From Marsupella aquatica (lineage: Eukaryota; Plantae; Marchantiophyta), in contig OZ316897.1 in assembly GCA_973895155.1 (NCBI GenBank), forward strand, positions 12,113,832-12,177,831: a stretch of 64,000 nucleotides of DNA, written 5' to 3'. The first letter of the stretch is position 1, and each line of letters begins with the position of its first letter. Below are positions 7,285-58,063 of the stretch, piece after piece. The notes below the pieces were generated by a model. That model had not been told where the DNA came from and ran no database searches. It worked only from the letters and a program-made list of their open reading frames with translations. The translations under genes and the position numbers were made by a program.

Positions 7285-10200
7285 TTACATGTCACTAGCG
7301 AGATCTGAATTCTTGAACTTCTGATGACAGTCGGCGCAGATCCAAACAACACCATGGAGAGAACCATCGTTGTAATTCAAACACACCCTTCTAAGTCCTA
7401 ACTTCTCCTCGTAGGTCTCCGGTGTCAATTTCCCTATCAGACTGGTGATGGCTGCTCTACTCTTTCCATACACATCTCGAGGGTTCAAGGGGGGGCCAGT
7501 ACGACCAAGTCCCAGGCCCTCAGTCATCAGATTATTTAATTCTGCCATTGAGTACCCGGTGGCCAAGATGATTCCATCTGCCAGTGATTTTCCTTGCTTC
7601 AAATGCTTGAAATCGGGCATAAGCAAACCCACCCCAGGCCACACGACAGTCGTTGCAAATTTGGCAGTGATTGAGAGAAATGTTAGCGACACTATGAGCC
7701 ACGGGATGAGTGTTTTCAGGGCTGGCTTTAGGTCGGAAACAATGATCCCTAGCTGCCCCTCAACATGATGCGGTGCGTAAGTATTGTACATGGCCTCACA
7801 TGCAAATTGCAAACGAACATTGACAGAGAAAGCCTCCTTCAATGTAGCCATCGCACCAGAATCTCTTGTCCCCAGATATATGAGGTTTGGGCAGGTTCTG
7901 TCCTTGTCTTCTTTGAAAAATCTGTGTGTGTCTTGAAGCTTCTGAAACACCCGTTTTTGCTCCTTCAAAACCTCTGCAAATCTATCTCGAAGAATCCTTT
8001 CGACAATCTTCACCTCCGCCAACGTTTCATCCTGGTTTTTCAGAATCTTGTCCAGCTTCTGATGTACTCCATGGAATGGCCATATCAGGTGGAATAGCCG
8101 TTCCCTGTTACCTGGAGATTTCCGACTAGTAGGGTTCAGTGCTTCCTCCTCCACCTCCTCGCCATCTGTTGAGACGTCGAATCCTTCAGTCAACTTGGGT
8201 GGATAGATTCCCAGGTTGACAGCTTCTTGCATTCCTTGCCTCAAAACTTTGAGATCATTCTTTCCGGACTTGACCACATCCTTTTTGTCCTCCGTGGACA
8301 GTAGCTGATCTTCTGTTATTGCCCCCGTTATGACAGAGTCACGGCCCACATAGCCGCCTACAGACCACTGCATTTCTCTTCCCATGCCGTGCCTTTGTAC
8401 CCACTTCTTCACTTGAGCCACTTCCACATTTCTGTCTGGCTGGTACACCGGTCTAGTAGACTGGGAAACCGGCCAAGGCCAAACCACTTTCTGCACGTAC
8501 TGAACCCCTCCACATATCTCATTCCACAAGTCCAGCAGTATGTTGACAAGATCATCAGCCAGGTTCACTTGGCATTGTTTCCTCTGGATCATATCCAACT
8601 TGTCTTTCCTGAACTGTGGCTTTACAAAGATACTAATCTCGTCAAATGTGGGAGAGTCCTTTTCGGCGTTCACCTCAATCTTTACGTTCATGTAGTCATT
8701 TGTAAACGTCATGGAATACTTACCAGCAACAAAGTCGTTGTCTGGGACATCTCCATTATTGAACTCTGGGCTCTGCGCAAGCTGAACCTGAAATCTGTGC
8801 CACAACGACATTGGTGCTAGAGTCTTCTCCTTTTTCTGGTGCTGAATTGAGAAACCCATTACCCACTGCTCTTCTCCATCCTCATGTTTGCTCTCAGATT
8901 TCCACGCATCTCCAGGTTCCAAATTTATATCAATGAGAGACGGTATAAACACTTTGTCCTCCTTGCCCTTGTAGCACAATCCCAACCAAAGCAAGATAGC
9001 AATGAAATCTTCACATTTTTGGGAACCCCATGTAGCTTCAAAGAAGCTCTTGAAAGCAGACATTGAAATAGAACCTGTAGTCGCATCCAGTTTTTTTCTA
9101 AAGATATGGTCGCCCTCTGCACGCTTGACCATATCTTCAGAAAGGAACATATTTCCTATAATTTCCTTGCAGAACCAGTTCGGATTGAGGATAATAAGCC
9201 TTGGAGAAGGGATATTCCACTGAGCAGGAAAGTTCTTGTCAACGTATATCAGGACTCCAGCTTGGTCCAGATATTTAGTTGCTGATAGAATTATTTGCTC
9301 AGGCCACTCTCGTAATTGTTGAACCATATCCACGAATGCTTCCCAACCTAGCACAGGGAACTCCTTCATTGCCTCACTCCAAACAGGGAGGCATTTTTGA
9401 ATGACAACACAGATATCCGGAACCATCTGGTTTGCAAGCATTTTTCTGCAATGCTCAAAGAGACATGTCTTAAAACCTTCGACTTTCTCTCTTATCCTAA
9501 CATCCACTATGAAGGGATCAGTACGAACATCCAAAAGGCCAGTAAATTTAGCCCTCTTTTCCTCAAGCAGCACCTTCCAATCTTGGCTGTTTCTCTGTAC
9601 CTGTTTGCGACCTCCCATGTTGTTCAGGACAACAAAGACATGTCGGGTTTGTCTGGTGGCCGCATGGTAGCTCGATGCAATGTAACGTAACCAGTAATCA
9701 AGTTGCATCTTGACCTCATCTGCTGGACAACTGGAGTTGCAAACAATAACAAATATAGTAGCTGCTCCTTGAGAGGTGGAAGCCTTTCCTCCTGAGCAAC
9801 TTAAAGCGGAAAAGAAAGCATTGTGCACCAAATGATAATCTTGCTGGCCAGCCATGTCCCAAACCGAGAGTGTTATTCGATTTCCTGTGTTGCTACATTC
9901 GCTGACGATTTCGGAGACATCAATGCCTCTGGTGCGGGTCTCCCTATGAGGCCACGTTTCCAATGTAAATAGTGATCTTAAACGTGTCCTTTGCAACGTA
10001 TTACAAAGTGTTGTCTTCCCCATCTTTGGATCCCCACATAGATAAATCTTTCCAAAGGCAGCGGGGACCATGGAAAAGCTCGAGAGCCCCGCTAAAATTT
10101 CCTTGTTTTTGATATTGCGCTTCCTTAGTTGCTGATATTGGCGTCTCAATTCTGAAAACTCGAACCAGTCAAAATTCAATCGGACAGTGAGAGTGTTGTT

Positions 10201-11124: not shown

Positions 11125-13777
11125 GGAGCAACATCTGGATGTCCATCCTGCTGTCCCGATCCACTTTTATCATCGGAGTGATGAAAGTGTTCCCCTTCTG
11201 TTCCCTGCAACTCTTCTTTGCTATACTCTTCACCCGTCACTCCATTCGAGCCCTCTCTTGGATCCTTCAAATTAACTCCATATAGTACCCTCTCCAACAG
11301 GATACCTCCTCTGAAATCGCACAAGTCTGTCGCCAAATGGTCTGAAGAAACTGAACGCGGAGCAGTTACATCCGGCCAGTCAATTGCCGCACTCAGATCA
11401 CCGATGGTTCTTGCTTACCTGGTGGTTGCACCTCCCGCCATTATCCTCCAGAATGGTCAAACAGCTCGAGGAGATTGATTCAGCTTGATGCTTCTCGAAT
11501 CCTCGGAGGTTGCCAGTGCTGATTGGACCTGAGCAAGCCTTTTTCTTCGCAAACTGTTGGCAGAGCGTACGCAACAATTACTTGACACCAGTCTGACTGC
11601 AGCCAGCTCGAGTTGAACATGCAAGTCAGTGTAATCGCCATTGATGTCGTGTTTTGGCCAACGTTGGATCCGGAAAGCAATGTAAAACGCGCTGAGCTCT
11701 ACTTGCCTGGGACAGACCTTGACACTGCATTCGACACTGAGAAGGATTTAGCTTTGGGCTAGTAACATTGACAGTATAGACAAGAAATTGTTTCTACGAC
11801 GGCTGTTGAGAGTGATCGATTGAAAATTGACCTACTCCTGAAGCAGCTATTAATATATATTCAATCCTAGGAGAGACGGAGACTTGTCTGATTACCGAGA
11901 CAGTAGTTAGTAGCCAAGCGCATGCCTTTGCCGTATTTAATCTCGTTTCGAGTTGGCTGAAATATAACAACCATAATCCCGGAATTGTCTCTGCCGCACA
12001 GTTTGATCAACCAAAGAGTACAATTGATCAGCGATGAAAAGGGGATAATCAGAAGCTAGAATTCTCCAGGGAATATCGAGAGCTTGGTTGAGGTACAATT
12101 GGGGAGGGGGAAAGCACCAATCAATCCGAACTATCAGAGTTTCGTCATGATCGTTCTATCCAGGGCACAGGCCGGATGTACATAGAATCCATAGATCGAG
12201 AGAAAGACGACCCAATCCATGGGTCGCGTCCTAGCTTCCTAAGAATTCAGATTCGCCAGACATCATACGGTTAGCAAGGACAGAATGACTAACCTGAACG
12301 AGCGCCCCACTAGAGGATATTTCCATCCAGTCACGTTGAAAAAGAAAGCTTTCGTGAACAGTGGGCACAGGCCGTAGCATCAAACTCGGAATGATTTCAG
12401 GCCTACAACTCGAGCAAACACATGATCGCCATACACAAAGTCCGTGCACAAGGGTCCCGATCGAGAGAACGTGTCATGGAATTGAACGTTTCGTAGTCTG
12501 TGCAACTTGATTTTGGCTATGGATGTTGTACTCGCCACATTTTCTTGCTCCCCAGTCTAAATAAACAAGCTAAGGGACTGACCCGCAACTTTTCAGAGAC
12601 TTTGCAAAAAACCAGGTGCTTGATTTTGACAACTTCTCAGGCTGCCTTCCAGACAGACTCGTTAGTGCACTGGACTCGTGACACCACAGTCCCCTCTCTG
12701 GAAGCTTGAATCCCCGTGATGAGTTTGTTGCAAACCAAGACCGGACTTGTGGGTTCAGTGACAAAAGCGATTGAAAGAGTAAAGCAGCAGTGAGGTCACT
12801 CAGCCCAATGTACAACTTAACCAACAGAACGAATTGGCAATCCCTAGACTTCAAAACTTCAGAGAGTCTTTCCAGTTTCTCAACATTCTAGCATGAAACT
12901 TTACTCGTTCTGATGCGAAGAGCTAACAACAAGAACGATGGAGGGTCTATCTGAAGTGCTAGTAAAAGTAGACTTCTAGTGAATTCGATGTGAACGCCAA
13001 AAAATTAGTCGAACCGATGTTGTTGACTCAGCTGTCCACGAGCTCACGGTGGACCGGAACTACAATGATTGTGCTCAGAACGACCGTAAATTGCTGAATT
13101 TCGGGCGCCCAACTGGGATCAACTGCAGATTGTTCATCGCATAGAGATTGGGCTAAGCTAGTGTAGTGTACTTCCGAACTTCGATTATGGCCCGGTGAAA
13201 CTGCAGAATATCTACCTACCATTATTATGCCATAACTCTCTCTGCAAAGCTATGACGTTTGGTATTATTCACGTCGAATGACAGTATCGAGGCTCATTAA
13301 TGATCTCTGCACAGTATCGACTATCGAGCCTCTCTGCAAAGCTATGACGTTTGGTATTATTAAGGTCGAATGACAGTAGCGAGGCTCATTAATGAGCCTC
13401 GCACGCTCTTTGCCGTGGCCATCCCGGTCCGCTGCCCGAGATAATGCGCGATTGCAATTTTTTTTTGAAATATCAAAGGTACTGAATGAACACCCACTGT
13501 TACAACGAGGAGTGGTGTGCCTGGCAGGATTCGAGCCTTGCTGGTACCCAACTGTGGTCATATACCACTGAAGCAGCATCAACTGCACCGAAGAGAAGTT
13601 TTGTTTTGTCAAATTATCTCAATAGGACGATCGGGCAATCCTGCGGGCAATGGTCTTTCTAACCGTACGAATTTTAGCATTAATATGCATCGATAGTGCC
13701 AATCGCTCTAAATTTTGTATTATGTAACCTGATTACCGTTACTTCAAGATAATTAGAGATGGTGTCCCCCTAATTGC
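11125..13777 (-). promoter_or_regulatory. Upstream/5' region of Roco copy 1, homologous to the upstream regions of copies 2-4
   Basis: Collinear similarity to ~25575-28171, ~43055-45240 and ~57920-58617, for example the shared blocks gtcaattgccgcactc, tcaaccaaagagt and ccagtcacgttga. Confidence 0.7.
13512..13580 (-). other. tRNA-like or SINE-head-like fragment within a copy-1-specific insertion
   Basis: Minus strand reads ...CAGTGG (A-box-like)...GGCTCGAATCC (B-box/T-loop-like) TGCCAGGCACACCA. I could not fold a convincing cloverleaf. Confidence 0.3.
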
Positions 13778-15815: not shown

Positions 15816-15818
<3 letters not shown>

Positions 15819-15864: not shown

Positions 15865-16599
15865 GGCTGCAGAGCCAAAGCAATGCAAAGTGAGAGCAGG
15901 GTCTGATGTTTTGCTCCACCCAGATGAAATTCATCGCACCCCCAAAAGAAAATAAATACAATTCCGCCACCCCCCTGTAAAAGAAAACTAAACTCTGGGT
16001 AAGACTGGAGGAAGGAAAGCTGTGTCAATAAGTTCACTAATCCTCTCCTGGAAACTGATAGCCTTGTTTGTGGTTTCAATTTCTAAGTGGATCTTGCATA
16101 TCCTCTCCCAATAACTCTGGCTCATGTTTATTACTCACAAAGAATATCCTCATCCACTGTAGTTTGAGTTGTACCCAAGAGATTGTTAGTGATAGGCAGA
16201 GAAACCTGTACTAGGGTCACTCATTTGGCTCCATGGTCTTCCTGGGGTTTTCCTTCTCCTATCTTTATTGGGTTCTGGACTTTGGGTTGGTGTTTCCTGG
16301 TTTGGTGCCTTTTGTTCTTTGGTAGTTTATATGACATGTTAATTCAATTCCATGACATTGAATTAGAACAGAAAGTGTAAAGAAATGAATCAAAACCCAA
16401 AGGAGCCCCGGCCCAACAATCAAATGCTATAGTAGTGGGCGCTCGAACCAACGTGACAAGTTTCTGTAGGGCCTCCCAAGTCACGATAGGTGATAAGAAA
16501 GGTCATGGGTAAGAGGGATTATTAGTGGGGCAGGTGGAATCTGGAGCATATGGCTGACAAAAAGGACCCCACTGTGGTGGAAGCATCTCAGGTTGCAAA

Positions 16600-21800: not shown

Positions 21801-22022
21801 TAAATGGAAATGAGAATTTCTGAGGGTTGCTCGAGCTCTACCTCACCACATCAAGTTCTTCTGGGTACAGTCCACGCGCTGAACGGTAGACTTCTAGTTG
21901 TACCAATTTTGGCCCGGAAAGTCATCTGTTCAGAGAGCCTTTCATACCACTTACACCAATGCGCTGCTACATGCTTGGCAGGCAGGCAGAAGTTGTGTCA
22001 ATCTCTCAAGATCGACCACGGT
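18808..22022. repeat. Unidentified ~3.2-kb block co-duplicated downstream of Roco copy 2
   Basis: Near-identical to 36446-39506 and 50981-54367; the same short ORFs recur in all three (e.g. MPNLLSLDDQNVIASRQ). Confidence 0.9.
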
Positions 22023-39400: not shown

Positions 39401-39506
39401 GAAAGTCATCTGTTCAGAGAGCCTTTCATACCACTTACACCAATGCGCTCCTACATCCTTGGCAGGCAGGCAGCGGTTGTGTGAATCTCTCAAGATCGAC
39501 CACGGT
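36446..39506. repeat. Second copy of the co-duplicated downstream block (Roco copy 3 unit)
   Basis: Matches 19000-22022 from gtttgagcatatggctcaag onward. Confidence 0.9.
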
Positions 39507-46100: not shown

Positions 46101-46475
46101 CGGCTTACCACATCTTGCCACATGTGCTGCTTTATATCTCATTATTTTTGGTCATATTTGGGGTGTATTTATACGCATGACACAAATACTTGAATACTGA
46201 GAAATCCCATAGTGGGGGATAAGACTTTATTCATATGTAATGCAAAAATTACAATGACTCGACAGAGTCTAAAAAATGAATCCCCAGAAGGAGTTCTTGA
46301 CAACAATTAGTTGTCTAAAGAATATAAGTCTATAATCTGGCAGCAATCCCGAGTCTGGTGCAATCTATAATATGCTGACTAAAACTATCTACAATCTGTC
46401 ATGCTAAAGTCTCAATGCCTCATGCTAATATGTGCCTCCGTCAATGTCTATAATGCCTCAAAGGCTAACATGTAA

Positions 46476-48401
46476 CTAGTTTAATGAAAGTCCAGAGGAT
46501 GGTCCTCCTCCATCTCCACCTCCACCTCCTGAAGGCCCCGCTCCATGAGGACCAAAGTTGAGGTTGAAATTGCAGCCATTCATAGTTCAATTGGTCAATG
46601 CCTTAATATTTTCAAAGACAGTGTTAATTACAGGGTTAACAATGGCCAAGTTTGGCAGCCGGGCAATGCCCTTAAATCTTGGATCAGAACAACTTCAAGC
46701 ATCCCAATCCATGAACTCAAAAAAAACATCCAAGTCCTTATCCTGTTCATCTTCAATGAAACCAGTCGGAACATTGTTGTCCAATGTGCTCAGGCCCCGT
46801 TCGACAGTAGGTGCCAAGAGCTCAACGCTTGCAGCTGCTGTGACAGCTTCAGTAGCCGCAACCTCCATCACCAGCTCAACTACTTGCTGAAGGAGAGTAG
46901 GCTCCATTTCTGTCACAGAAGGCAATGTCGACTCTGCAGAATCGGCAGCTACGCTCACCAAGAAACAAATTAGTTTTATTCACAAATATTCATAGACTGA
47001 CCAAATTGAGCACAAGTAATTGACTGAGCAAAACAGAGAATGAAAGACTGCTGTATTACCTTCGGATGGCAGCAACCCGGCTCCATCCTTCAGTTTCTTA
47101 GCCTGTGGCTCGTCCACCAAAGATACATCAGGCCCAGACCAATCTTCACACTTCTCACCATCAATAAGCACCCTCTTGCCATTTGCTGTCTCCAAAGTTA
47201 CTGTCCCAGGGTAAGGAGTCCCATCCGTGGCACACCTGAGTGCAGCTCGCACTTTAGCTTTTGTGCTACGATCATACCTCTCATACGCACCCTCGCTTTT
47301 GTGACCTGAGATCTTCATCCCAACCTTTGGTGGAACACCCTCAGCTCCCATTCGCGAAATACAAGTGGTACGTCCAGTTTTATTGGAGACACCATCTGTA
47401 TCGAGGCCAGCCTCCTGATGCAGTACTTTTAGACAAGAGCCGAGGGTCTTCTCACCGAGTCTCGATGTCAAATACCATGCATGTGTCCTCGGGTGGTCAA
47501 TACACTAATAAAATAAAATAAAAGTGGCACTTACAGGTAGATGAAGGACCAACATCTTTATGGTCTCGATCACATCGAAATCATAGTTTATGACAGCGGG
47601 CCTGAAATGCTCCTCCTGGTAGCGATCCATACTTAGGTACCTGTAGTTCTTGTTGAATCGCTCATCTACTTCACAAAATCACCGTGAACATCAACTCCAA
47701 AAGCAAAGTCAGATTTCATGAGATTATACAGCTCCTTACCACCACAAATACAAAATCGATTCAGCAAAAAGAAAACTGCCCTCCGCTGCAGGCCTCTAGA
47801 GTGTGAAACAGAGGTACTAGAATGAGCAAGTATGGTGGCCTCATCAGCAAAAGTGATCACAGAGGCTTTCTTCCAGGGCAAGTTTTCCCCTGCCTTCCGC
47901 GAGCGTTCCATAGCCAGCACGCACGCACGCAACAGCAACCGGCTTGAACTGAGGCGACGATCTCATGTCGAACACAGGTTCTTCCTTACCTGTTTCGACA
48001 ATGCGCTTCTCTTGCTTCTTACGTAGAATCCGGTGAAACGCTCGATACAGCCCCATCAAGGTCTGGGAGGGATAGAGATTACTATTCTTCTTACAAACCT
48101 GCTCAGAAAACTTTGACAAGAGTAACACACAATCTTGGCCAGGGAGTTCCTCGAATGGAATGGCGCTATTCCAGCCCTTAAACTCACGGAACTTAGTCAG
48201 ACGATATGCAGCCCACTTATCTACAGCAGCGCTGGGGTTGCTTCCACCCTTGGCAAGGGTATGCTGAAACTGCTCATCTTCTGGTAGGAACTCGCAACAC
48301 ATTCCGTTTGGAAGATTAACAGTAAGGTGTTGGGGTGCCATGGACTCAGGCGCGATCAAGTCAGGACACCATTCAGATTCTGAATGTCTGATTCTAAACA
48401 A
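46476..48401 (-). pseudogene. Crypton/DUF3504 (ZMYM/QRICH1/KCTD1-type) tyrosine recombinase-like pseudogene
   Basis: Ordered motifs LLSKFSEQVCKKNSNLYPSQTL; LQRRAVFFLLNRFCICGGKELYNL; K(Y)DERFNKNY; WYLTSRLGEKTL; SNKTGRTT..M...GV....MKISGHKS..AYERY; C-terminal NGCNFNLNF. Frameshifts near 47920 and 47668 plus internal stops. Confidence 0.75.
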
Positions 48402-49751
48402 GAAAAAGAATCAGCACCGGACGAACATTTGCCTACTGGCTTGACGATCATTCCTCCCGTTGCTGCAATAGTCGATGTCATGGCTGACGTGCCCAAGCTG
48501 AAGGATGGCGCTTGCTCTCTAGCTAGCAACCTCTAGGAGTCATTGATGTTAAGGAGTCAATCAGTCCACTAAAAACGAGGCCTTGATCGGCTCTACTAGT
48601 GTCCGCAGCTGAGACAAACATCAAGAGTTGAATAGAAATAAGTGAAGAAGTTGACAGTCAAAGCAGTAAGTGAAGCAGTCGACGGTCTAAAGTGAGGCCC
48701 GATTGACTCTACTAGTGTTCGCAGCTGAGACAAACATCAAGAGTCAAATAGCAGTAAGTGTTCAAGCAGTCGACAGTTAAAGTAGTAAGTGAAGCAAGAT
48801 TTCGACAGTGGACAATGATGAAGCAATCGACAGTCAAATAGTTGTAAGCACCTCCAAATGGTTATTGATGAAGCAGTCGATAGGCGAAGAGCAATAAGTG
48901 AATATAAACGAGTGCATTCAACGTCAATGAATGCAATTAAACAATCAACAAAACCTGGCGATGATTTGCGAGGCATTATTGACCACCTTCGTCCTACACT
49001 CCAATCGACAACTCTGTGCAGATAGTTAAATATCAGCCGCAGGCAAAAGTAATTAGAACCTAGCAAAAAATGAAAAGAGGATTTGCAATCATGCCATGTC
49101 GACATTCACAAAGCATTCAAAGATGAACATTCAATAAAGCATGGAAATGCCTCGCAAATGACTCTGAAGGTGCCAATCCTGCGCATTCGCAATCTCGAAG
49201 CCTCGCACTCTCCACGGCCTGTCAGTGGTGCGCACCCTCCAGAACAACGATCCACCTCCAAGCCCATGTAAAGAGTGTTGCCCACTCTAAAATGATCCTC
49301 CCGTAGACGACTGGAACTCCGCAGCCTAGCGGCGCGGCGTCCGCAAAAAATGGAATGAGGTAAAGCAATCGTGAGGGCACACCTAAGTAACGCCCACCCA
49401 GGTATCAACTGACTTGGACTTCCCAATCTCAGCCGTCCAATATCGACCACCCGTTGGATCTTGATCGAGAACCACCCTAAACCCTGCGATCTGAAATCTG
49501 TGCCGTTAGTTTTCAAATGACCGGCCTAGATTGGATGCGGATGGGGCGTCACAGGAGCCACCAAGGCAGGACACATCCCCCCTCAAATCTGGGCCGTCGG
49601 AAGGAGGCTGAACATGCGCCCCTCAATCTTGACGTACAGTAGCACCCTGAAATCTGGGCTGTCGAGGGATGACGAACATGCAATCCGTGCCAGGCGCCTC
49701 CAATTGTGACTGTAGATTTTGGGTTTTGAAAACCCCATGACCTTTAACAAA

Positions 49752-49875
49752 TATTTAGGGTCCCCCTCCGCACCTTAATGGCGTATTGGGGCTCCCGTAC
49801 ACCTCCCCGCTCCCGCGGGTCGGCATATGGTCGCCCCCAATACGCCATTAAGGTGCATGGAGGGACCTTAAACAT
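49752..49875. repeat. Small hairpin or MITE-like inverted repeat inside the TIR element
   Basis: gcaccttaatggcgtattgggg (49770-49791) is perfectly inverted at 49835-49856; imperfect extension outward. Confidence 0.8.
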
Positions 49876-50980
49876 ATACATTTTTACAACGGAAACACCA
49901 GCCCCATTATTACAAAGGAAACATTGTTGCAAATGTTAACACATTTGCCTCCCCACTTTTGGCAGTGCCATACCTTCACTCTAGATCTTTGAGCAGCTGC
50001 AACCTTCGCCCCTAGGGTTTACACACAGAGGCGCAACAAAGTTGTCACTGTGTACCTCATTTTCCCTGCATTTTCTTGCCCTGTTTTTTACAAAGACACA
50101 AACATCGCAAATCCAAAATGGGCCGCCACAGGGAGGGGGAAGCTTAACTTGGGAGGGTTAGTCCAGACCAATCATGCCTCGACATCTGGCAGCGGGGACC
50201 TGACGTTGGGTTAGTACTAACCCATATACGGTTGGGGGCAGGGAAGCAAATACATTCGTTTGGGGGACACCTTAGAGATTTCGGCAAGTTAGGGGGACAG
50301 GCTCATAAAAAGCCCATTGCTTAAATAGACCCCTTCCTCGAGATATGGTTTGCTTGATCAGCCCCTAGAAACTTTTTTGCCTCAATCATATCCCTCTTTA
50401 TGATCCGTACTGAATGTTCTTCTATAAGTTCTTATAGATAAGTTTTTGGGTTAGAAGCACCAAACTGGGTGAATTGTGACTGTATGCCTCAACCACGAAC
50501 CATGCAAATATTTGAAAGTAAACCGTGCCCGTCACCGGGGCTTGAACTGAGTGCAGGCAACGTTGTGGAGACATGTCACTCCTTTTTGCGCTGCCTGTAC
50601 ATCGACATTAGGGCTATTCGGATTTGACGACATTCACATGAATGTCTTCACTTTGTAAACATCATTCAGTGTTTTGCGATATCCTCTCATTACGTCATTT
50701 TCATCCACGCAAGAATAGCGACGAGTTTCCGTGGCTTTCACAAGGTGCACAAACCTGTCAGATTCAATTGCACAAGAAAGCAAGGTAATGTTATGCAGAT
50801 GGTTGAAAAAACACTAAGTGTGGTGAGAAGACAATGTCCACAATGTCTCCCAAAACCATCAATTTTGGCCATTTACCCCGCCCAAATGGCATGGGCGAGC
50901 AAAATATGCTCTAGCTCAACATGCATTCCTTGGGTAACTGCAGGTCAGTCGTGTAGTCCCCAAATATCTCTTTGTAAATG

Positions 50981-53900
50981 GACCAGCCAAAAAGATGATG
51001 TCCGTTTGGGAGTCGCGCCTCCGTGGGTCCAGGACATCCAGCACTAATTTCTGTAGGCAACAGGGACATCCTCTGTATAGCCCCATATCCGATGGAATGA
51101 GAAACTACACTAGTCGTTGTTTTGGAATTCACGAGATAACTATTGGGGTCTGAATCGAATGGCGCTGGATTGGGTTTGAGCATATGGCGTAAGTCCCCTC
51201 ATATCCAAATTCAAGCCACCCTCTCCATCAAATAGTCTTAGCAATTCCCTCCTCCACTGCTCAGGGTCCCTAAAAGCCACACCAGACAATCATTCAGCAC
51301 TGACTTCAGACTTGATGATTCCAACTAGAATTATCGTATGATCTTTGCATGTATCTCTATCAACACTGGTTCACTGTTTTCGTTGAGACAACTTCTATCT
51401 CTGTCAACTCCTTAATAAGTTCCCTTAACGCGGGATTTAACTTCAATGGTCCTCCAAACGAATCTTGTACAGTAGAACTCAACGGGGATATCATAGAACA
51501 TCGTGATGACGCCGGTGGTTTCTCCCAAAATGAATTTCCTCCTCCACTGCTCAGGGTCCCTAAAAGCCACACCAGACAATCATTCAGCACTAAGCTCAGA
51601 CTTGAGGATTCCAACTAGAATTATCGTACGATCTTTGCATGTAGCTCTCTCAACACTGGTTCACTGTTTTCGTTGAGACAACTCTGTCAACACCTGAATA
51701 AGTTCCTTGACGCGAATTATAACTTCAATGGCCCTCCAAACGAATCTTGTAATGTAGAACTCGACGGGGATATCATAGAACATCGTGATGACGCCGGTGG
51801 TTTTTCCTAAAATGAATTTCTTATCAAGCTCATCACTATTGCAACGTGCAGGTCCGCATGCCCAGTTTGGGCAATTCCAGCTTCCAGCGTTTCCACGGGA
51901 TAGTTGCCTACTAGCTATGCAACAATTACCCTGTAATCTAAAACTTTCCGACGCGGTCGTCACTACAGACTCCAGATATAGAGTGTCCAGAAATATGCGT
52001 TTTCTTAATCTAATGCAACATTAGAGTAGACCCTCCTCCAGAATTTTCAGCTAAAACCAATCCCAAGAGAAGAAACGAAAGATTATACCCAGCCCTGACG
52101 AATAAAAGCTCGTAAATACGAAACATTTTCTTGGTTATGTCTGTACAAAACTTCCCACTACAGAGATAATCGAAGTCTCTTCGACATATGACTTCATACT
52201 CGTGATGCAGAAAATGGTGTGACTAACTTCTTTAGCGGCGAACCATGAGACCGTGGACATATCGAAGCTAGGCAGCATTTACTCAAGAAAAAACGAGGAC
52301 GGCAACCAACTGAACAACATTTACCTCAATTGGTCAAAATGCCTATCGGAATATCAATTGGGGAAAACTTTGATGCACATCTTCACGAGAATTCCGCCAG
52401 GAAAGGAACGTTCAAATTCCAATCAAGCCCGACTTACTATAGCTCTGCGTGGCTCTAAACTACACAGTTTTCTTCATTTGCTTGTCTCAACGGTTTGAGT
52501 ATTTTCTCCTTTTCTAATTTTCAATTCTTCGATTGCAGCCAAGAATTTGATCGTTTTGGGAGAAAGTACTGAATTATGTACTTCAAGAGAAACAGGCAGT
52601 TCTCACGTATACATCTGCCCTTGCGTCGAAAGAACAAGATTAGGATCATCCAGAAATGAAACTCTCTAATCCGGATATTCGAAGTATAAATATGTCAAGC
52701 CCGATGGAGAAATCTGTGTGGTCGCAGGCGCGTGCTCGGCAAAAAATGGATCCCGATCCTTTCAGCTGAAGAAACCAAATCCTGGGGAACTAGATTACCC
52801 AACTGTGCTAAATAAATTCTCCAGAATCTCGCTATTCGAAGGAGAAATATGTCAAGCATTTGACGAGAAGCTATGACGTTCTGGTCGTCCAGGGACAGCA
52901 AATTTGGCAATTATAATATATGCAAAAGGATCTGCTTCCTAGCCTGACGGAATAAACGAAGATACGACTTACTACTTTAACAGAGATCGAGAAGACCATG
53001 GACATAGAATCCAGACACAAATTATTGAAGAAAAAACAAGGACAGCAACCAAGTGAACTCACATGTCGGTGGCGTCAACGAGTAACGTAGGGTTCGCAGG
53101 GCTTCATGACAGCTTCTCCCATTGGCAAACACATTTCATGATTGTCCAATTCACCTCTCGGCATATCATTTCGAGAAACATTAATTCAGCAAGTCTGCCA
53201 CCAAAGGACCGTCCAATAAAGCCCCAATTACTAAAGCTATGCTTGGTTCTAAACTACGTGTAGTTTGTCTAGACCAAATAGATTAAGACCGGTCATTCTT
53301 TGCATTGGATTCTTCACTGTCCAAATCACAGTGCTTTTCCCAATTCCATCGACCTAAGTGTGGTTCCCTCGATTGTGCGACAAAACTGCATAAAGGCTTT
53401 GTATTTGCATCCCAGGTTGATCGTTGCCCACTAATGAAGAGCATGTCACATTGGGGGAGGGGGAAATCGAAATTCCTGTTCTTAGCAATGAACAATTTCC
53501 TCCATTAGCTCCACCTATTGCCACTCGCGCCAGAAGCACCTGAAAGAGTAGACCGAGGTAATGTTAGTTACTGCTTGTTTGATTCACATAATAAAACAAT
53601 TGTAACGCACTCTGGAATTTCAGAAGCCATGCAATTATTCAGATGAGAAAAACACTGGCGGCTCTACACTTGAACTCACGGAGGCGTCGTCTTTGTGCTC
53701 AATGCTGTCGTCAATTCCATCAAGCGACTAAAAATATATAAACCACACAATTCGTAAGATGGAATGCAAATAAATGTCTTCGTAAGTCAGATGGAGTTGA
53801 AACCGTCGGCCAAAAATCGAAGTTAGAGAATCAAACCAAATGCTCATTCAAATCTCCCCAGATCACTTGCAAGGGCAATCTTTCTTCGCCTCATCATTGT

Positions 53901-54367
53901 CTTTCAACATGAGAAAGCTCATTGAAAACAAGATGAACGATAAGGGTAGTCGCTTCACGGTTAGAGTCAACGCTTCTAGGTACTTGACTGGACAAAACTG
54001 AAACACGCAATTTGCTGCATGTAAAAATGCTCAACATTGTCCGCCAACACGGAGTATGCTCCAGAAATCGCGGGTCTAGTAGACGGACATCCTGCCGACA
54101 AAACTCCTTCCACCAAGTGGATGCCCAAGTACTCACGACAACTATTAAATGGAAATGATAATTTCTGAGTGTTGCTGGAGCTCTACCTCACCACATCAAG
54201 TTCTTCTGGGTACAGTCCACGCGCTGAACGGTAGACTTCTAGTTGTACCAATTTTGGCCCGGAAAGTCATCTGTTCAGACAGCCTTTCATCCCACTTACA
54301 CCAATGCGCTGCTACATCCTTGGCAGGCAGCCAGAAGTTGTGTCAATCTCTCAGGATCGACCACGGT
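50981..54367. repeat. Third copy of the co-duplicated downstream block (Roco copy 4 unit), with an internal 290-bp duplication and a ~140-bp deletion
   Basis: Matches 18808-22022. cctccactgctcaggg occurs at 51251 and 51541; deletion near 52182. Confidence 0.9.
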
Positions 54368-57300
54368 TTACATGTCGTTAACCAGATTAGACTTCCTGAA
54401 CTTCTGATGACAGTCGGTGCAGATCCAAACAACACCATGGAGAGAACCATCGTTGTATGCCAAACACACCTTTCGAAGTCCTAACTTCTCCTCGTAGGCT
54501 TCTGCTGTCAATTTTCTTACTAAATTAGTGATGGCTGCTCTACTCTTTCCATACAAATCCTGAGGGTTCAAAGGGGGACCAGTAGGATCAAGTCCCATGC
54601 CCTCAGTCATCAGCTTATCTAATTCTGGCATTGAGTACTCGGTGGCCCAGACGATTCCATCTAACACTGATTTTCCTTGCTGTACTTGCTGGAAGTCGGG
54701 CAGTAGCAAACCCGTCCCAGGGGCTACGACATTCGCTGCAATTTTTGCAGAGATTAAGAGAACTGTGAGCGACACTTTGAGCCACGGGACAAGTGTTTTC
54801 AGGGCCGGCTTGAGGTCTGAAACAACCAGACCCAGCTGGTCCTTGACTTGATGCGGTGTGTAACTATTGTACCTGGCCTCACATGCAAATTGCAAACGAA
54901 CATCGACACTTGGTGACAAAGCCTCCTTCAATGTAGCCCTTACACCAGAATCTCGTTTCCCCAAATAGATGAGGTTTGGGCAGGTTCTATCCTTGTCTTC
55001 TTTCAGAAATCTGTCAGTGTCTTGAAGCTTCCGAAACACCCTTTTCTGCTCCTTCAAAACCTCTGCAAATCCCTCCACAAGCATCCTTTCAACATTCTTC
55101 ACCTGCTTGTAGATGTTATCCTGATTGTTCATAATCTTATCCAGCTTCTCATCCATATTGTGCAGCTTTCTGTTAACAGTTGATAATCTTTGCATCTTCT
55201 CGGCAGTTGGGCTTGTAGGTGGATTCGCCATTTCAATGCCATCCGATGCCAGTGCCGGCTCCTCCACCTTGTCCCCGTCTGTTGAGATATCCAACTCCTC
55301 AGTTAACTCGGGTGGATAGATTCCCAGGGTGACAGCTTCCTGTAATCCTTGCCTCAAAACATTCAGGTCGTTCTTTGCTGACATAATCACATACTTTTTG
55401 TCCTTTGTGGACAGCAGCTGATCTTCTGTTATTGCAGAATCATAGCCGACACGCCACTGCATTTTTCTTCCCATGCCATGCACTTGCACGCACTTCTTCA
55501 CTTCAGCCACTTCCACATTTCTGTGCTTCATGTACCCTTCTTGTCTAGACTGGGAAACCGGCCAAGGCCAAACCACTTTCTGCACGTACCGAACCCCTCC
55601 ACAAATCTCATTCCACAGGTCCAGGAGTATATTGACAAGGTCATCAGCCAGGTTCACTCGGCAATTTTTCCGTTGTATAACATCCATCTCGTCTTTCCTG
55701 AATTGCGGCTTCACCAAAATGCTGATCTCATCAAATGTGGGAGAGTACTTTTCGGTGTTAACCTCAATCCTTACGTTCATGTAATCCACTGTGAACGTCA
55801 TGAAATACTTACCAGCAACAAAGTCATTGTCTAGGACATTTCCATTATTGAACTCTGGGCTCTGAGCAAGCTGAACCTGAAATCTATGCCACAAGGACAT
55901 TGGTGCTAGAGTCATCTCCTTTTGCTGGTGCTGAATAGAGAAACCCATCACCCACTGCTCCTCTCCATCATCATGTTTGCTCCTAGACTGCCACCCATCT
56001 TCAGGATCCAAATTCCCATCAATAAGAGACGGTATAAACAGTCTGTCGCCCTTGCCCTTGTAGCACAATCCCAACCATAGCAAGATAGCAATCAGATCTT
56101 CACAATCTTTGAGACCCCACCTAGCTTCAAAGAACTCCTTGAATGTATCCATTGAAATAGAACCTGTGGTTGCATCCAGTTTTCTTCTAAAGATATGGTC
56201 GCCCTTTGTAAGCTTGACGATATCTTCAGAAAGGAACATATTCCCTATAATTTCCTTGCAGAACCAGTTCGGATTGAGGATAATAAGCTTTGGAGAAGGG
56301 ATACCCCATTGAGCAGGAAAGCTCTTGTCAACGTTTATCAGGACTCCAGCTTGGTCCAGATATTTAGTTGCTGATAAAATTGCTTCGTGAGGCCAGTCCT
56401 CACGTAATTGCTCAACCTTCTCCACAAATTCGTCCCAACCTAGCACAGGGAACTCCTTCCTCGCCTCACTCCAAATAGGAAGCCTTTGTTGAATGACATC
56501 ACAGATCTCGGGAACAATCTGTTCTTTAAGCAATGTTCTGGAATGTTCTAAGAGACATGTTTTAAAACCATTGACTTTCCCTCTTCTCCGAACATCCACT
56601 ATAAAAAGATCAGAACGAACATCCAAAAGGCCAGTAAACTTTTTCCTCTTTTCCTTTAGCAGCACCTCCCAATCTTGGCTGTTTCTCTGTACCTGTTTAT
56701 GTCCTCCCATGTTGTTCAGGACAACAAAGACATGTCGGGTTTGTCTGGTGGCCTCGTGGTAGCTCGATGCAATGTAACGTAACCAGTAATCAAGCTGTTT
56801 GTCGACCTCATTTGGTGGACAGCTGGAATTGCAAACAATGACAAATATGGTAGCTGCTCCTTGAGAGATGGTAGCGGTCCCATCTGAGAAACTTAGAGCG
56901 GGGAAGAAAGCATTGTGCACCAAATGATAATCTTCCTGTCCCGCCATGTCCCAAACCAGGAGTGTTATTGGGTTTTGATTTTTCCTCTTGCTACCTTTGC
57001 TGCCAATTTTGGAGACATCAATGCCTCTTGTGCGGTCCTCCACGTGAGGCCTCGTTTCCCATGTCCCTAGTGATCGCCAAAGTGTCCTCTTCAATGTATG
57101 ACAAAGTGTTGTCTTCCCCACATATGGATCTCCGCATAGATAAATCTTTCCAAAGGCAGCTGGGACCATGGAAGAGCCCGAGAGCCCCGCTAAAATATCC
57201 TTGTATCTGGTATTGCGCTTCCTTAGTTGCTGATATTGGCGTTTCAATTTTGGAAACATGAACCACTCAAAATCCACTTTTACAGTGAGAGACTTGTTTA

Positions 57301-58063
57301 GGGCGAATGCAGACACTAAAGCAGTGGCGCCTTCTTCAGAATGGCTTGAAGATGGCACACAAACGTACGCCAGTGAATCAAGGCGACCAGATTTAAGGGC
57401 CTCGACTAACGACAGCAGGCCCACATTTGTGAAAGGATTCCCGTCAAGATTCAACTGTTCTAAATTTGGCATGACGGTGACGTCGCCATATTGGAAGGCG
57501 GTTGCCAGCGTAGCCATGTCATCGTCATTGATGCCAGTCTGCCAGAGATAGAGATGGGTCAACTTCTCCAAATTACCGGATTGAATTGCACGTCCAAGAG
57601 CTTCGACGCCTTTGGTTCCTACCGCGTTCCCATCAAAGTCAAGTGTCCTCAAAGATGAAAATTTTGCTGAACCCAGAGCATTGCTGACTGCCTCACTACG
57701 ATCGTCCTCTAACCCGGTCTCCCCAAGCGACAAAATCTCCAATGCAGACATTTGACCAGATGCCAGAGCCTCGGCAAGGGTGAAGTGTCCAATCCCAATA
57801 TCCTTGAGCGCTAGGTCGATGGCTACCACTTGCGACAGATTGCCGAGCTTGATGGCGTCGCGTAGTTCCTCCATACTGCTAATGTAGATCTGAGTGCTGC
57901 TGCCAGTGCTAGCCGCCTCAGGCGCGACGTCTTGACGCCCAGCCAGCTGCCCCGATCCAGTTTTATCATCGGAGTGACGAAAGTGTTTCCCTCCTGTTCC
58001 CTGCGACTCTTCTTGCCTAGACTCTCCACCCGTCACTCCATTCGCGCCATCTCTTCGATCCAT
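54368..58063 (-). CDS. LRR-ROC-COR (Roco) protein, TORNADO1-like, copy 4, 1231 aa
   Basis: Uninterrupted ATG-started ORF; GDPYVGKTT, WDMAGQ, COR; C-terminus nearly identical to copies 2 and 3. Confidence 0.9.
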   Translation of the reverse strand: MDRRDGANGVTGGESRQEESQGTGGKHFRHSDDKTGSGQLAGRQDVAPEAASTGSSTQIYISSMEELRDAIKLGNLSQVVAIDLALKDIGIGHFTLAEALASGQMSALEILSLGETGLEDDRSEAVSNALGSAKFSSLRTLDFDGNAVGTKGVEALGRAIQSGNLEKLTHLYLWQTGINDDDMATLATAFQYGDVTVMPNLEQLNLDGNPFTNVGLLSLVEALKSGRLDSLAYVCVPSSSHSEEGATALVSAFALNKSLTVKVDFEWFMFPKLKRQYQQLRKRNTRYKDILAGLSGSSMVPAAFGKIYLCGDPYVGKTTLCHTLKRTLWRSLGTWETRPHVEDRTRGIDVSKIGSKGSKRKNQNPITLLVWDMAGQEDYHLVHNAFFPALSFSDGTATISQGAATIFVIVCNSSCPPNEVDKQLDYWLRYIASSYHEATRQTRHVFVVLNNMGGHKQVQRNSQDWEVLLKEKRKKFTGLLDVRSDLFIVDVRRRGKVNGFKTCLLEHSRTLLKEQIVPEICDVIQQRLPIWSEARKEFPVLGWDEFVEKVEQLREDWPHEAILSATKYLDQAGVLINVDKSFPAQWGIPSPKLIILNPNWFCKEIIGNMFLSEDIVKLTKGDHIFRRKLDATTGSISMDTFKEFFEARWGLKDCEDLIAILLWLGLCYKGKGDRLFIPSLIDGNLDPEDGWQSRSKHDDGEEQWVMGFSIQHQQKEMTLAPMSLWHRFQVQLAQSPEFNNGNVLDNDFVAGKYFMTFTVDYMNVRIEVNTEKYSPTFDEISILVKPQFRKDEMDVIQRKNCRVNLADDLVNILLDLWNEICGGVRYVQKVVWPWPVSQSRQEGYMKHRNVEVAEVKKCVQVHGMGRKMQWRVGYDSAITEDQLLSTKDKKYVIMSAKNDLNVLRQGLQEAVTLGIYPPELTEELDISTDGDKVEEPALASDGIEMANPPTSPTAEKMQRLSTVNRKLHNMDEKLDKIMNNQDNIYKQVKNVERMLVEGFAEVLKEQKRVFRKLQDTDRFLKEDKDRTCPNLIYLGKRDSGVRATLKEALSPSVDVRLQFACEARYNSYTPHQVKDQLGLVVSDLKPALKTLVPWLKVSLTVLLISAKIAANVVAPGTGLLLPDFQQVQQGKSVLDGIVWATEYSMPELDKLMTEGMGLDPTGPPLNPQDLYGKSRAAITNLVRKLTAEAYEEKLGLRKVCLAYNDGSLHGVVWICTDCHQKFRKSNLVNDM

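What the first reader, a model, noticed from the sequence alone, without database searches (positions are those of the whole stretch)
7285..58063. Tandem array of four intact, intronless LRR-ROC-COR genes: candidate non-NLR immune or non-self receptor system in a plant
Seen: four ~1200-aa paralogues head-to-tail, all with open frames, while the co-duplicated spacers and most neighbouring transposons carry indels or stops. Variation is concentrated in the LRR, the C-termini are homogenised, and the genes are mosaic. Established: the characterised plant Roco, TORNADO1, is a developmental gene; clustered, LRR-hypervariable, recombining arrays typify NLR loci; LRR-ROCO genes have been proposed as immune candidates in the brown alga Ectocarpus. 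Inference: an LRR sensor / ROC-COR switch / C-terminal effector family evolving like resistance genes.
Basis: partly seen in the sequence, partly recalled or inferred. Interest (0 to 1): 0.92.

Follow-up and report, generated by a model that had tools for sequence, protein, structure and literature searches.

The report
Fast-evolving liverwort LRR-GTPase gene array
Four intact neighbouring copies of a large LRR-GTPase gene, from a liverwort-only sister family of the plant gene TORNADO1, are kept functional while the ligand-binding face of their LRR changes very fast, as in immune-receptor genes; no immune role has been shown.

Summary
Four uninterrupted minus-strand ORFs (1193-1231 aa from their ATGs) encode an RI-type LRR, Roc, COR and a TORNADO1-type C-terminal module.

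- **Age of the copies.** Copies 2-4 lie in 8-kb units that are 92-94% identical. Copy 1 is older, with dS about 0.3.
- **Purifying selection.** The CDS has no frameshifts, where 14-17 are expected at the flank indel rate. Outside the LRR, dN/dS is 0.4-0.6.
- **Variation in the LRR.** Variation falls on the predicted exposed beta-strand positions: 28 of 35 vary, against 24 of 156 other LRR positions. Nonsynonymous change there is 6-10 times the local synonymous rate. Calypogeia fissa paralogues show the same pattern; 46 angiosperm TRN1 orthologues do not.
- **Mosaicism.** The genes are mosaic (chi-square p 2e-18).
- **C-termini.** The "homogenised C-termini" need no homogenisation. The same 2-5% divergence runs through 3 kb of non-coding 3' flank.
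- **Phylogeny.** The genes are not TRN1 orthologues. They sit in a clade whose named members are all liverworts.
- **New here.** The Roc G4 aspartate is lost, and the C-terminal domain matches no solved fold.
- **Untested.** No RNA run was available, so expression and an immune role remain untested.

The scan has found this family before on other DNA of this genome, with the same conclusion.

The parts
7285..10866 (-). Copy 1, an intact 1193-aa LRR-Roc-COR-TRN1C gene. It is the older paralogue, with most of the disordered N-terminus deleted.
   Evidence: ORF; Pfam Roc 40.3 bits and weak COR-A; 73-74% aa identity to copies 2-4; dS about 0.31-0.34.
22023..25715 (-). Copy 2, intact, 1230 aa from the ATG at 25715.
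39507..43196 (-). Copy 3, intact, 1229 aa from the ATG at 43196.
54368..58063 (-). Copy 4, intact, 1231 aa.
42393..42962 (-). LRR domain of copy 3: seven RI-type repeats. The equivalents are copy 1 10162-10731, copy 2 24909-25481 and copy 4 57260-57829. The hypervariable sites are positions 2, 3, 5, 7 and 8 of each LxxLxLxx strand.
   Evidence: Translations; Pfam LRR_6. 28 of 35 exposed positions vary against 24 of 156 others (Fisher 3e-13). With repeats 1-5 only: 21/25 against 16/127 (3e-12).
41751..42281 (-). Roc GTPase domain of copy 3. The P-loop, switch I Thr and DxxGQ are intact. G4 reads NNMG where the TRN1 clade has THxD.
   Evidence: Pfam PF08477 at 38-43 bits against a cut-off of 27; motif table; translation.
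40587..41750 (-). COR region of copy 3 (COR-A and COR-B equivalents).
   Evidence: COR-A hits are weak and below the cut-off in copies 1 and 2. Homology over the whole length to TRN1, which carries COR-A and COR-B.
39510..40577 (-). TRN1-type C-terminal module of copy 3: a disordered linker, a 74-residue helix, then a 200-aa alpha/beta domain (39510-40136). The domain has nearly invariant Cys, Glu, His, Gln, Gly and Trp-x-Cys positions (fragment residues C186, E187, H196, Q201, G203, W338, C340).
   Evidence: blastp to the TRN1 C-terminus 6e-10 and to Marchantia P0010 2e-12, pairwise; conservation; AF2 pLDDT 75 and 80.9, pTM 0.79; no fold match.
19000..27469 (-). Duplication unit 2: gene plus 3 kb of 3' flank and 1.7 kb of 5' flank.
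   Evidence: 91.7% identity to 36446-45017 over 8644 nt.
36446..45017 (-). Duplication unit 3.
51000..58617 (-). Duplication unit 4. It has a shorter 5' flank and an internal duplication of about 300 bp at 51243-51820.
   Evidence: 93-94% identity to units 2 and 3.
7089..13238 (-). Older unit 1.
   Evidence: 81% identity in the CDS and 72% in the upstream flank to units 2-4.
56092..56611 (-). Imported tract at the Roc-COR junction and COR-A of copy 4. It is 10-16% diverged from copies 2 and 3, which are 2-4% apart there. The donor is not in the window.
   Evidence: dS 0.23-0.28 against 0.03.
24641..25416 (-). Divergent LRR tract of copy 2, 10-15% from copies 3 and 4.
32165..33145 (-). MULE transposase remnant in spacer 2-3.
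   Evidence: Pfam MULE 1e-12 on a 326-aa ORF.
33899..35536 (+). Copia reverse-transcriptase remnant. The ORF starts inside the integrase.
   Evidence: Pfam RVT_2 5e-70.
45746..50313 (.). Element bounded by roughly 200-bp inverted repeats, inserted in spacer 3-4.
Evidence: Inverted match of 45746-45948 to 50112-50313 at 84%.
60423..61424 (+). Copia gag remnant upstream of unit 4.
   Evidence: Pfam Retrotran_gag_2 and Pol_BBD.

Best explanation
The array is a recently amplified tandem set of cytosolic LRR-Roc-COR proteins. The proteins belong to a liverwort-only sister family of TORNADO1, and all four genes are kept functional by selection.

The most likely working model has three steps.
1. The concave beta-sheet face of the seven-repeat RI-type LRR is a ligand-binding surface under diversifying selection. 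Each paralogue therefore recognises a different, fast-changing ligand, most plausibly non-self molecules from pathogens or symbionts.
2. By analogy with the bacterial Roco protein CtRoco and with LRRK2, the LRR folds back on Roc-COR in the resting state. A binder on the concave face is incompatible with that closed state, so ligand binding would release the Roc-COR nucleotide switch.
3. The signal leaves through the conserved TRN1-type C-terminal module, a long helix followed by an alpha/beta domain that may bind zinc. Its biochemical output is unknown.

New specificities arise by unequal crossing-over, by patchwise gene conversion from other family members, and by point substitution at exposed LRR positions.

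Shown here: the architecture, the selection pattern, the mosaicism and the phylogenetic position. Inferred: ligand binding, autoinhibition, the nature of the ligands, and any immune output.
For: - **Architecture.** Pfam finds LRR_6, Roc and weak COR-A. Homology to TRN1 and Marchantia proteins runs the whole length and includes the C-terminal module.
- **Purifying selection on the genes.** No frameshifting indel occurs, where 14-17 are expected at the 3'-flank rate (P below 1e-6). Outside the LRR, nonsynonymous against synonymous odds ratios are 0.38-0.61, with p down to 5e-15.
- **Diversifying pattern.** LRR dN/dS is 0.96-1.94, against 0.3-0.6 elsewhere. Among copies 2-4, 28 of 35 canonical exposed positions vary, against 24 of 156 other LRR positions (p 3e-13). 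The result is robust to dropping the irregular repeats 6 and 7. Only 3 of 20 scaffold positions vary.
- **Rate at exposed codons.** Nonsynonymous change there is 6-10 times the LRR synonymous rate (p 5e-5 to 4e-12) and 7-21 times the 3'-flank divergence.
- **Independent family support.** In eight C. fissa paralogues, without the window rows, entropy is 1.89 bits at exposed positions against 0.90 at other LRR positions (p 2e-11).
- **Control.** In 46 angiosperm TRN1 orthologues the values are 0.78 and 0.71, not significant.
- **Mosaicism.** Chi-square p is 2e-18 and run-length permutation p is 0.002 and 0.009.
- **Phylogeny.** The window copies nest in a Calypogeia expansion inside a liverwort clade (SH-aLRT 92). 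The TRN1 clade is separate (100) and has its own liverwort orthologues. The AU test rejects a single liverwort clade (p 2e-5).
- **Mechanistic precedent.** In CtRoco the LRR folds back on Roc-COR, and a nanobody on the concave LRR face is incompatible with the closed state (PMC11052575).
- **Precedent for ROCO receptors.** Brown-algal LRR-ROCOs have positively selected concave-face sites (PMC11378527; PMC3341825).
Against: - No expression evidence exists. The only runs holding the sequence cover CDS and flanks alike, as DNA would, and no RNA run was listed.
- No link to microbes has been found.
- The C-terminal module matches no known executioner or signalling fold: best VIA Z 2.7, Foldseek E above 0.3.
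- The Roc G4 Asp that reads the guanine base is missing in this expansion, so a classical GTP switch is not assured.
- Whole-LRR dN/dS above 1 is not significant pair by pair.
- Part of the LRR divergence of copy 2 comes with raised dS, so it was imported by conversion and did not arise in place.
- The exposed positions were assigned from the canonical motif, not from a structure of this LRR.
- Fast-evolving LRR surfaces also occur in families that have nothing to do with immunity.
Confidence: 0.5

Rival explanations
1. The genes are duplicated TRN1-like signalling genes with an endogenous role in development or cell polarity. LRR variation would reflect subfunctionalisation or co-evolution with a fast-evolving host partner, not recognition of non-self.
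For: The whole architecture, including the C-terminal module, is shared with TRN1. TRN1's only known role is leaf patterning, together with the tetraspanin TRN2 (PMC4104024). Roc, COR and the C-terminus are under purifying selection.
Against: TRN1 orthologues show no hypervariable concave face. Liverworts keep separate TRN1-clade orthologues. Many paralogues in arrays, with exposed-site change at 7-21 times the neutral flank rate, is not what a conserved developmental partner predicts.
Confidence: 0.2
2. The genes take part in an intragenomic or reproductive conflict, for example recognition of transposon products, of meiotic or sex-linked drivers, or of mating partners. Such conflicts also drive diversifying selection and tandem amplification.
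For: The array sits in transposon-rich DNA. The evolutionary signature does not say what kind of fast-evolving ligand is bound.
Against: There is no specific evidence. The transposon insertions differ between spacers, so they came after the duplication and did not travel with the genes.
Confidence: 0.12
3. The copies are young duplicates on their way to decay, unexpressed or redundant. The LRR pattern would be inherited from conversion donors elsewhere in the family, not produced by selection on these four genes.
For: The closest annotated C. fissa relative, P0002, is split into two ORFs. No RNA evidence exists. Imported tracts are present.
Against: All four frames are open, with P below 1e-6 for no frameshift at the flank indel rate. 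Outside the LRR, omega is significantly below 1, even for the youngest pair, copies 3 and 4 (p 6e-6). For that pair LRR dS is at baseline (0.045) while exposed-site dN is 0.27.
Confidence: 0.1
4. The four copies are an assembly artefact: collapsed or falsely expanded repeats.
For: Short-read contigs from four public runs are fragmented over the region, and none spans a copy.
Against: The copies differ by 5-27% in protein and carry different spacers and different transposon insertions. Unitigs at 99% identity or more to copy 3 occur in runs from two studies.
Confidence: 0.03

Closest known systems
TORNADO1 (TRN1/LOPPED1) of Arabidopsis and its orthologues in streptophytes
   Same: Same domain order: RI-type LRR, Roc, COR, then a C-terminal module with the conserved Cys-Glu, His and Trp-x-Cys-x-x-Cys positions. 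Identity is 22% over 83% of the length.
   Different: - The window genes sit in a separate clade. The TRN1 clade holds Chara, liverwort, moss, fern and angiosperm members, whereas these genes fall in a liverwort-only clade.
- TRN1 has 14 LRRs with no hypervariable face and is 63-90% conserved across angiosperms. The window genes have 7 LRRs with a hypervariable face.
- TRN1 keeps the G4 motif THxD; here it reads NNMG.
LRR-ROCO candidate immune receptors of brown algae (Ectocarpus, Saccharina)
   Same: LRR-Roc-COR architecture, a multigene family, and positively selected residues on the concave LRR face (PMC11378527; PMC3341825).
   Different: Brown-algal diversity comes from shuffling and alternative splicing of one-repeat exons. 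Here the CDS is intronless, and diversity comes from point substitution, unequal crossing-over and conversion tracts. The LRR type differs, and the brown-algal proteins are not reported to have a TRN1-type C-terminal module. Whether the two families are related beyond Roc-COR was not tested.
Plant NLR resistance-gene clusters
   Same: Tandem arrays in transposon-rich DNA, birth-and-death evolution with sequence exchange, hypervariable solvent-exposed LRR residues on a conserved scaffold, and an NTPase between the sensor and the output domain.
   Different: No NB-ARC or NACHT STAND domain and no TIR, CC or RPW8 domain was found. The switch is a Ras-like Roc-COR. The LRR is N-terminal and of the RI type. 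No function in resistance is shown.
Chlorobium tepidum Roco (CtRoco), and animal MFHAS1/MASL1 and LRRK2
   Same: An LRR-Roc-COR core. CtRoco gives the structural precedent for an LRR that folds back on Roc-COR and is released on activation (PMC11052575). PDB sequence hits to LRRK2 Roc are at E about 1e-4.
   Different: Only distant similarity, confined to Roc. Those proteins have a canonical G4, no TRN1-type C-terminal module and no paralogue arrays.

Membership tests
ROCO proteins (Roc-COR tandem) | Roc (Ras of complex) GTPase domain | tested here: met
   PF08477 scores 38.1-42.8 bits in all four copies, against a cut-off of 27.
ROCO proteins (Roc-COR tandem) | COR domain directly after Roc | tested here: inconclusive
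   PF16095 COR-A scores 22.2 and 17.5 bits in copies 1 and 2, below the 35.3 cut-off, and gives no hit in copies 3 and 4. The region does align over its length with TRN1, which has COR-A at 31.8 bits (also below the cut-off) and COR-B at 46.5 bits, above its 27-bit cut-off.
ROCO proteins (Roc-COR tandem) | Complete G1-G4 nucleotide-binding motifs | tested here: not met
   G1 (GxxxxGKT), the switch I Thr and G3 (DxxGQ) are present. G4 reads NNMG where the TRN1 clade has THxD, so the base-reading Asp is absent in the whole Calypogeia expansion.
TORNADO1 orthologue group | Shared full-length architecture, including the C-terminal module | tested here: met
TORNADO1 orthologue group | Placement inside the TRN1 clade | tested here: not met
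   The window copies fall in a liverwort-only clade (SH-aLRT 92) outside the TRN1 clade (100), which has its own liverwort members. The AU test rejects uniting all liverwort rows (p 2e-5).
TORNADO1 orthologue group | Conserved gene without a hypervariable LRR face | tested here: not met
   Entropy at exposed against other LRR positions is 0.78 against 0.71 in 46 TRN1 orthologues, and 1.89-2.26 against 0.9 in the Calypogeia expansion. The window alone has four copies.
NLR (STAND) immune receptors | NB-ARC or NACHT nucleotide-binding domain | tested here: not met
   No such Pfam hit at E up to 0.01 in any copy. The distant NLRC3 hits cover only the LRR.
Resistance-gene-like evolutionary mode | Tandem paralogues with sequence exchange, and hypervariable exposed LRR residues on a conserved scaffold | tested here: met
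Resistance-gene-like evolutionary mode | Demonstrated role in recognising or restricting a microbe | not testable with these tools
   Needs expression and genetic experiments. No RNA run was available.
Brown-algal LRR-ROCO candidate receptors | One LRR per exon, with exon shuffling | tested here: not met
   The LRR lies within one uninterrupted ORF in all four copies.

The most novel reading that the evidence does not exclude
Liverworts have a second class of intracellular non-self receptors, independent of NLRs. In it, a Ras-like Roc-COR switch with relaxed base specificity, not a STAND ATPase, couples a hypervariable LRR to a previously unseen TRN1-type output domain that may bind zinc. TORNADO1 of flowering plants would then be the conserved, developmentally co-opted relative of an ancient receptor family.
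Probability: 0.3. Interest if true: 0.88.

Novelty: new variant of a known kind. Interest (0 to 1): 0.68.

Why it matters
Plant intracellular immunity is explained almost entirely by NLRs, and recently also by tandem kinases. A land-plant family with a different molecular switch that shows the same evolutionary signature would be a convergent receptor system: tandem birth-and-death, conversion mosaics, and a hypervariable ligand face on a conserved scaffold.

It would also give a handle on TORNADO1, whose biochemical function and C-terminal domain are unexplained. The Marchantia members of the clade (for example Mp5g10940, Mp3g24120, Mp5g11750 and Mp3g18490) make the idea testable in a model liverwort.

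I found no paper describing a ROCO expansion in liverworts. [quoted passage not shown] The tree here contradicts that.

Tried and rejected
- **Expression.** The look-up of sequencing runs listed no RNA run. The four runs laid on 38400-44399 are Logan contigs of unknown kind. They cover CDS and flanks alike in short fragments, so they say nothing about transcription or about introns.
- **C-terminal fold.** Foldseek against the PDB gave nothing for either model. VIA-align wide found only generic long-helix matches for the 356-aa model (Z about 6) and a best Z of 2.7 for the 209-aa domain. The ESM Atlas gave no usable hit. Model coordinates are not returned, so the geometry of the Cys/His cluster could not be checked.
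- **Homodimer of the C-terminal module.** Complex prediction gave no verdict (score 0.01). This is evidence neither for nor against binding.
- **First tree attempt.** The tree with the mixture model did not finish. The reported tree uses LG+G4 with a quick search.
- **Compensated frameshift in copy 1's linker.** Rejected. The nucleotide alignment shows an in-frame 24-nt deletion and a 75-nt hyperdivergent patch in a region predicted to be disordered.
- **Donor of copy 4's imported tract.** None of the other three copies is the donor; they are 81-89% identical there.
- **Neighbouring ORF 3713-4819.** It has one anonymous homologue and no Pfam family.
- **Other spacer ORFs.** They gave no meaningful Pfam hits.
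- **TRN1 paper.** The paper by Cnops et al. (2006) is not held in the library.


Full report
**What is there**

The window holds four long minus-strand ORFs at 7285-10866, 22023-25769, 39507-43250 and 54368-58063. The ORF track starts copies 2 and 3 at an upstream TTG. Their real ATGs are at 25715 and 43196 and give the same MDRREG... start as copy 4. The products are 1193, 1230, 1229 and 1231 aa and align end to end. Copies 2-4 are about 90% identical to each other and 73-74% identical to copy 1.

Pfam finds RI-type LRRs (LRR_6). It finds a Roc GTPase domain above the curated cut-off in all four copies (38-43 bits against 27). It finds COR-A only weakly, in copies 1 and 2. Each ORF covers the whole length of the closest annotated relative (P0001 of Calypogeia fissa, 100% query coverage). 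The coding sequence therefore has no introns. UTR introns cannot be judged.

**Array structure**

A self-comparison shows three units of about 8 kb: 19000-27469, 36446-45017 and roughly 51000-58617. They are 92-94% identical. Each holds the gene, 3 kb of 3' flank and up to 1.7 kb of 5' flank. An older unit (7089-13238) is 81% identical in the CDS and 72% upstream.

The spacers differ from one another:
- spacer 2-3 holds a MULE transposase remnant (32165-33145) and a copia RT remnant (33899-35536);
- spacer 3-4 holds an element with roughly 200-bp inverted ends (45746-50313);
- a copia gag remnant lies at 60423-61424;
- a 145-bp satellite flanks units at 16596-17424 and 59103-59423.

The transposons therefore arrived after the duplications.

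**Are the genes maintained?**

Yes. The 3' flanks of units 2-4 are 96% identical. They carry 15-16 indel events per pair in 3 kb, and 11-14 of these are not multiples of three. The 3.7-kb CDS has 1-3 indels per pair, all of exactly 3 nt. At the flank rate, 14-17 frameshifting indels are expected in each pair, so the chance of seeing none is below 1e-6.

Outside the LRR, nonsynonymous change is significantly rarer than synonymous change. The odds ratios are 0.38-0.61, with p = 6e-6 for the youngest pair (copies 3 and 4) and 5e-15 for copy 1 against copy 3.

**Where the variation is**

Nei-Gojobori estimates by domain give dN/dS of 0.96-1.94 in the LRR and 0.3-0.6 in Roc, COR and the C-terminus. 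LRR dN is 3-10 times that of the other domains.

I laid out the seven repeats and marked the canonical solvent-exposed strand positions. These are positions 2, 3, 5, 7 and 8 of LxxLxLxx, established for RI-type LRRs.
- Among copies 2-4, 28 of 35 exposed positions vary, against 24 of 156 other LRR positions (Fisher 3e-13) and 12% of positions in the rest of the protein.
- With only the five regular repeats the result stands: 21 of 25 against 16 of 127, p 3e-12. Only 3 of 20 scaffold positions vary.
- Nonsynonymous change at the exposed codons is 6-10 times the synonymous rate of the LRR (p 5e-5 to 4e-12). It is 7-21 times the divergence of the non-coding 3' flank.
- For the pair of copies 3 and 4, LRR dS is at the baseline (0.045) while exposed-site dN is 0.27. 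Imported sequence therefore cannot explain the excess in that pair.

Two limits apply. Whole-LRR tests of dN above dS are not significant pair by pair.

**Independent support and a control**

In eight C. fissa paralogues, with the window rows left out, mean column entropy is 1.89 bits at the exposed positions. It is 0.90 at other LRR positions and 0.92 in the rest of the protein (p 2e-11). In 46 angiosperm TORNADO1 orthologues, with 14 repeats annotated in the same way, the values are 0.78 and 0.71 (not significant). The hypervariable face is thus a property of the liverwort expansion and not of the TRN1 family as a whole.

**Mosaicism and the 'homogenised C-termini'**

A sliding window along the unit alignment shows a baseline of 2-5% divergence for all three pairs. 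This baseline runs through the 3' flank and the 3' half of the CDS. Two tracts stand out:
- in copy 4 at the Roc-COR junction and COR-A (copy-4 coordinates about 56092-56611), 10-16% from copies 2 and 3, which are 2-4% apart there;
- in copy 2 in the LRR (24641-25416), 10-15% from copies 3 and 4.

The distribution of the three informative site patterns is strongly heterogeneous (chi-square p 2e-18). Runs of one pattern are longer than in shuffles (p 0.002 and 0.009). No copy in the window is the donor of the copy-4 tract (81-89% identity), so it came from a paralogue elsewhere.

The low divergence of the C-terminal halves, however, is shared by 3 kb of non-coding flank. It is most simply the age of the triplication and not special homogenisation. 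Copy 1's C-terminus is not homogenised with the others.

**Whose genes**

The best database hits are unnamed proteins of the leafy liverwort Calypogeia fissa (59-64% identity). A Marchantia protein follows at 25%, and TORNADO1 at 22% over 83% of the length. An exhaustive profile-free search of 1.84 billion representatives found 251 clusters, 35 of them at E up to 1e-30. Every close hit that carries a name comes from Calypogeia, Marchantia polymorpha, M. paleacea or Riccia.

A maximum-likelihood tree of 36 proteins (LG+G4, quick search) separates two groups:
- a TRN1 clade (SH-aLRT 100) holding Chara, three liverwort orthologues, mosses, ferns and angiosperm TRN1;
- a liverwort-only clade (92), within which a Calypogeia expansion (100) holds the four window copies as one group (100), sister to P0002 and P0003.

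An AU test rejects a tree that unites all liverwort sequences (p 2e-5). Two caveats apply: the group was named after the tree had been seen, and the branches are long.

The window copies are absent from the protein collection. The locus of P0002 in the C. fissa assembly GCA_965154635.1 is 75% identical in DNA and is itself split into two ORFs. The window is thus from C. fissa or a close relative, and these four genes are not in the public annotation that I could see.

**New details of the protein**

1. *Roc motifs.* The P-loop, the switch I threonine and DxxGQ are invariant. The G4 motif is THxD throughout the TRN1 clade and NxxD in most Marchantia and Riccia members of the sister clade. It reads NNMG or NNIG in the whole Calypogeia expansion, so the aspartate that reads the guanine base is gone and no conserved substitute lies nearby. 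Nucleotide binding is probably kept, since the P-loop is under constraint, but base specificity may be relaxed. This is inference.
2. *C-terminal module.* The last 356 residues are homologous to the C-terminus of TRN1 and of Marchantia relatives (pairwise blastp 6e-10 and 2e-12). Across 34-37 family members the nearly invariant residues are a Cys-Glu pair, a His ten residues on, Gln, Gly, and a Trp-x-Cys at the very end. A majority-conserved second Cys follows after two more residues. A C-H-C-C zinc site is plausible but untested.
3. *Predicted fold.* AlphaFold2 predicts a disordered linker, a 74-residue helix and a 200-residue alpha/beta domain (pLDDT 75; for the domain alone 80.9, pTM 0.79). 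I read it as part of the fold, not as a membrane span.
4. *No structural relative.* Neither Foldseek nor an exhaustive VIA-align search of 48,161 PDB representatives finds a relative of the domain (best Z 2.7). Nothing ties the output domain to known cell-death or signalling modules.

**How it most likely works**

The anatomy is sensor (hypervariable concave LRR face), switch (Roc-COR) and output (TRN1-type module). In the bacterial Roco protein CtRoco the LRR folds back on Roc-COR in the resting dimer and swings away by about 135 degrees in the GTP state. A nanobody bound in the LRR curvature is sterically incompatible with the closed state (PMC11052575). A ligand on the variable face could therefore open and activate these proteins in the same way.

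I hold this receptor model at about 0.5. Within it, non-self (pathogen or symbiont) ligands are the most likely, giving about 0.3 for a true immune function. The rivals are an endogenous TRN1-like signalling role with a co-evolving host partner (0.2), intragenomic or reproductive conflict (0.12), young duplicates drifting to decay (0.1) and an assembly artefact (0.03).

**Comparison with what is known**

The closest family by descent is TORNADO1, but these genes fail the orthology test. They also fail TRN1's conservation and copy-number pattern.

The closest analogue by behaviour is the LRR-ROCO family of brown algae. It is proposed as immune receptors on the same kind of evidence, with positively selected sites on the concave LRR face (PMC3341825; PMC11378527). 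It diversifies by exon shuffling, whereas these genes are intronless and diversify by substitution, unequal crossing-over and conversion.

These genes are not NLRs, because they have no NB-ARC or NACHT domain.

I found no paper on ROCO expansions in liverworts or on the Marchantia members. [quoted passage not shown]

**Earlier notes of this scan**

The scan has met this family before in the same genome. Two followed-up clusters on other pieces (s1-766321, s1-768025) were judged to be a liverwort-only sister family of TRN1 that evolves by birth and death without proof of immunity. My tree and tests agree with that judgement.

First-reader notes place further arrays 30 kb before the window, and 18 kb and 60 kb beyond its end (s1-790739, s1-790749, s1-790714). 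The window would then be part of a larger super-cluster. I did not check this.

**Limits**

- There is no RNA evidence.
- Exposure of the LRR positions is taken from the canonical motif.
- The codon tests are pairwise counts, not likelihood site models.
- The tree root rests on one anonymous ROCO.

Noticed in passing
window 16596-17424 and 59103-59423: A satellite of about 145 bp (5.9 and 2.2 copies, 76-87% matches) lies just upstream of unit 4 and between units 1 and 2. The surrounding 800 bp (16146-16947 and 58615-59435) are 88% identical. It may mark old unit boundaries or crossover points.
   Followed up: partly
window 28581-29013: A young 117-bp tandem repeat, 3.7 copies at 98% matches, lies in spacer 2-3. 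It creates spurious ORFs with meaningless Pfam hits.
   Followed up: partly
window 3713-4819 (+): An ATG-started 368-aa ORF has no Pfam family. Its only homologue is one anonymous 354-aa protein (49% identity) from a Logan assembly. Whether it is a gene or a transposon protein is unknown.
   Followed up: partly
window 852-1718 (+), repeats at 972-1333: A 288-aa ORF is built around 60- and 75-bp tandem coding repeats (84-95% matches). It has no Pfam family.
   Followed up: no
window 6951-7078: A perfect 64-bp direct duplication lies about 200 bp downstream of the stop codon of copy 1, in its 3' flank.
   Followed up: no
L001 10001-14139 (C. fissa GCA_965154635.1, contig CBCUJL010000034.1): The closest annotated relative, P0002, stands alone between a GH63 glycosidase gene and PPR genes. 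It is split into two ORFs (10001-11959 and 11968-14139), and part of its LRR is duplicated (10095-10593 repeats 10794 onward). The annotated 'intron' probably bridges a break.
   Followed up: partly
family alignment, Roc G4 motif: The G4 motif degrades stepwise across the family. It is THxD in the TRN1 clade, NxxD in most Marchantia and Riccia members of the sister clade, and NNMG or NNIG in the Calypogeia expansion. Two Marchantia members (Mp3g24120 and AXG93_1474s1220) have also lost the switch I Thr motif.
   Followed up: partly
tree: TRN1-clade members occur in Chara braunii, liverworts, the moss Ceratodon (four paralogues) and ferns. [quoted passage not shown]
   Followed up: yes
window 42255-42270 (LRR of copy 3): In the laid contigs, a cluster of five differences is fixed in run X1 but absent from X2-X4. 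Several other differences are shared by all four runs. This hints at allelic or paralogue variation between samples, but paralogues cannot be told apart with short contigs.
   Followed up: no
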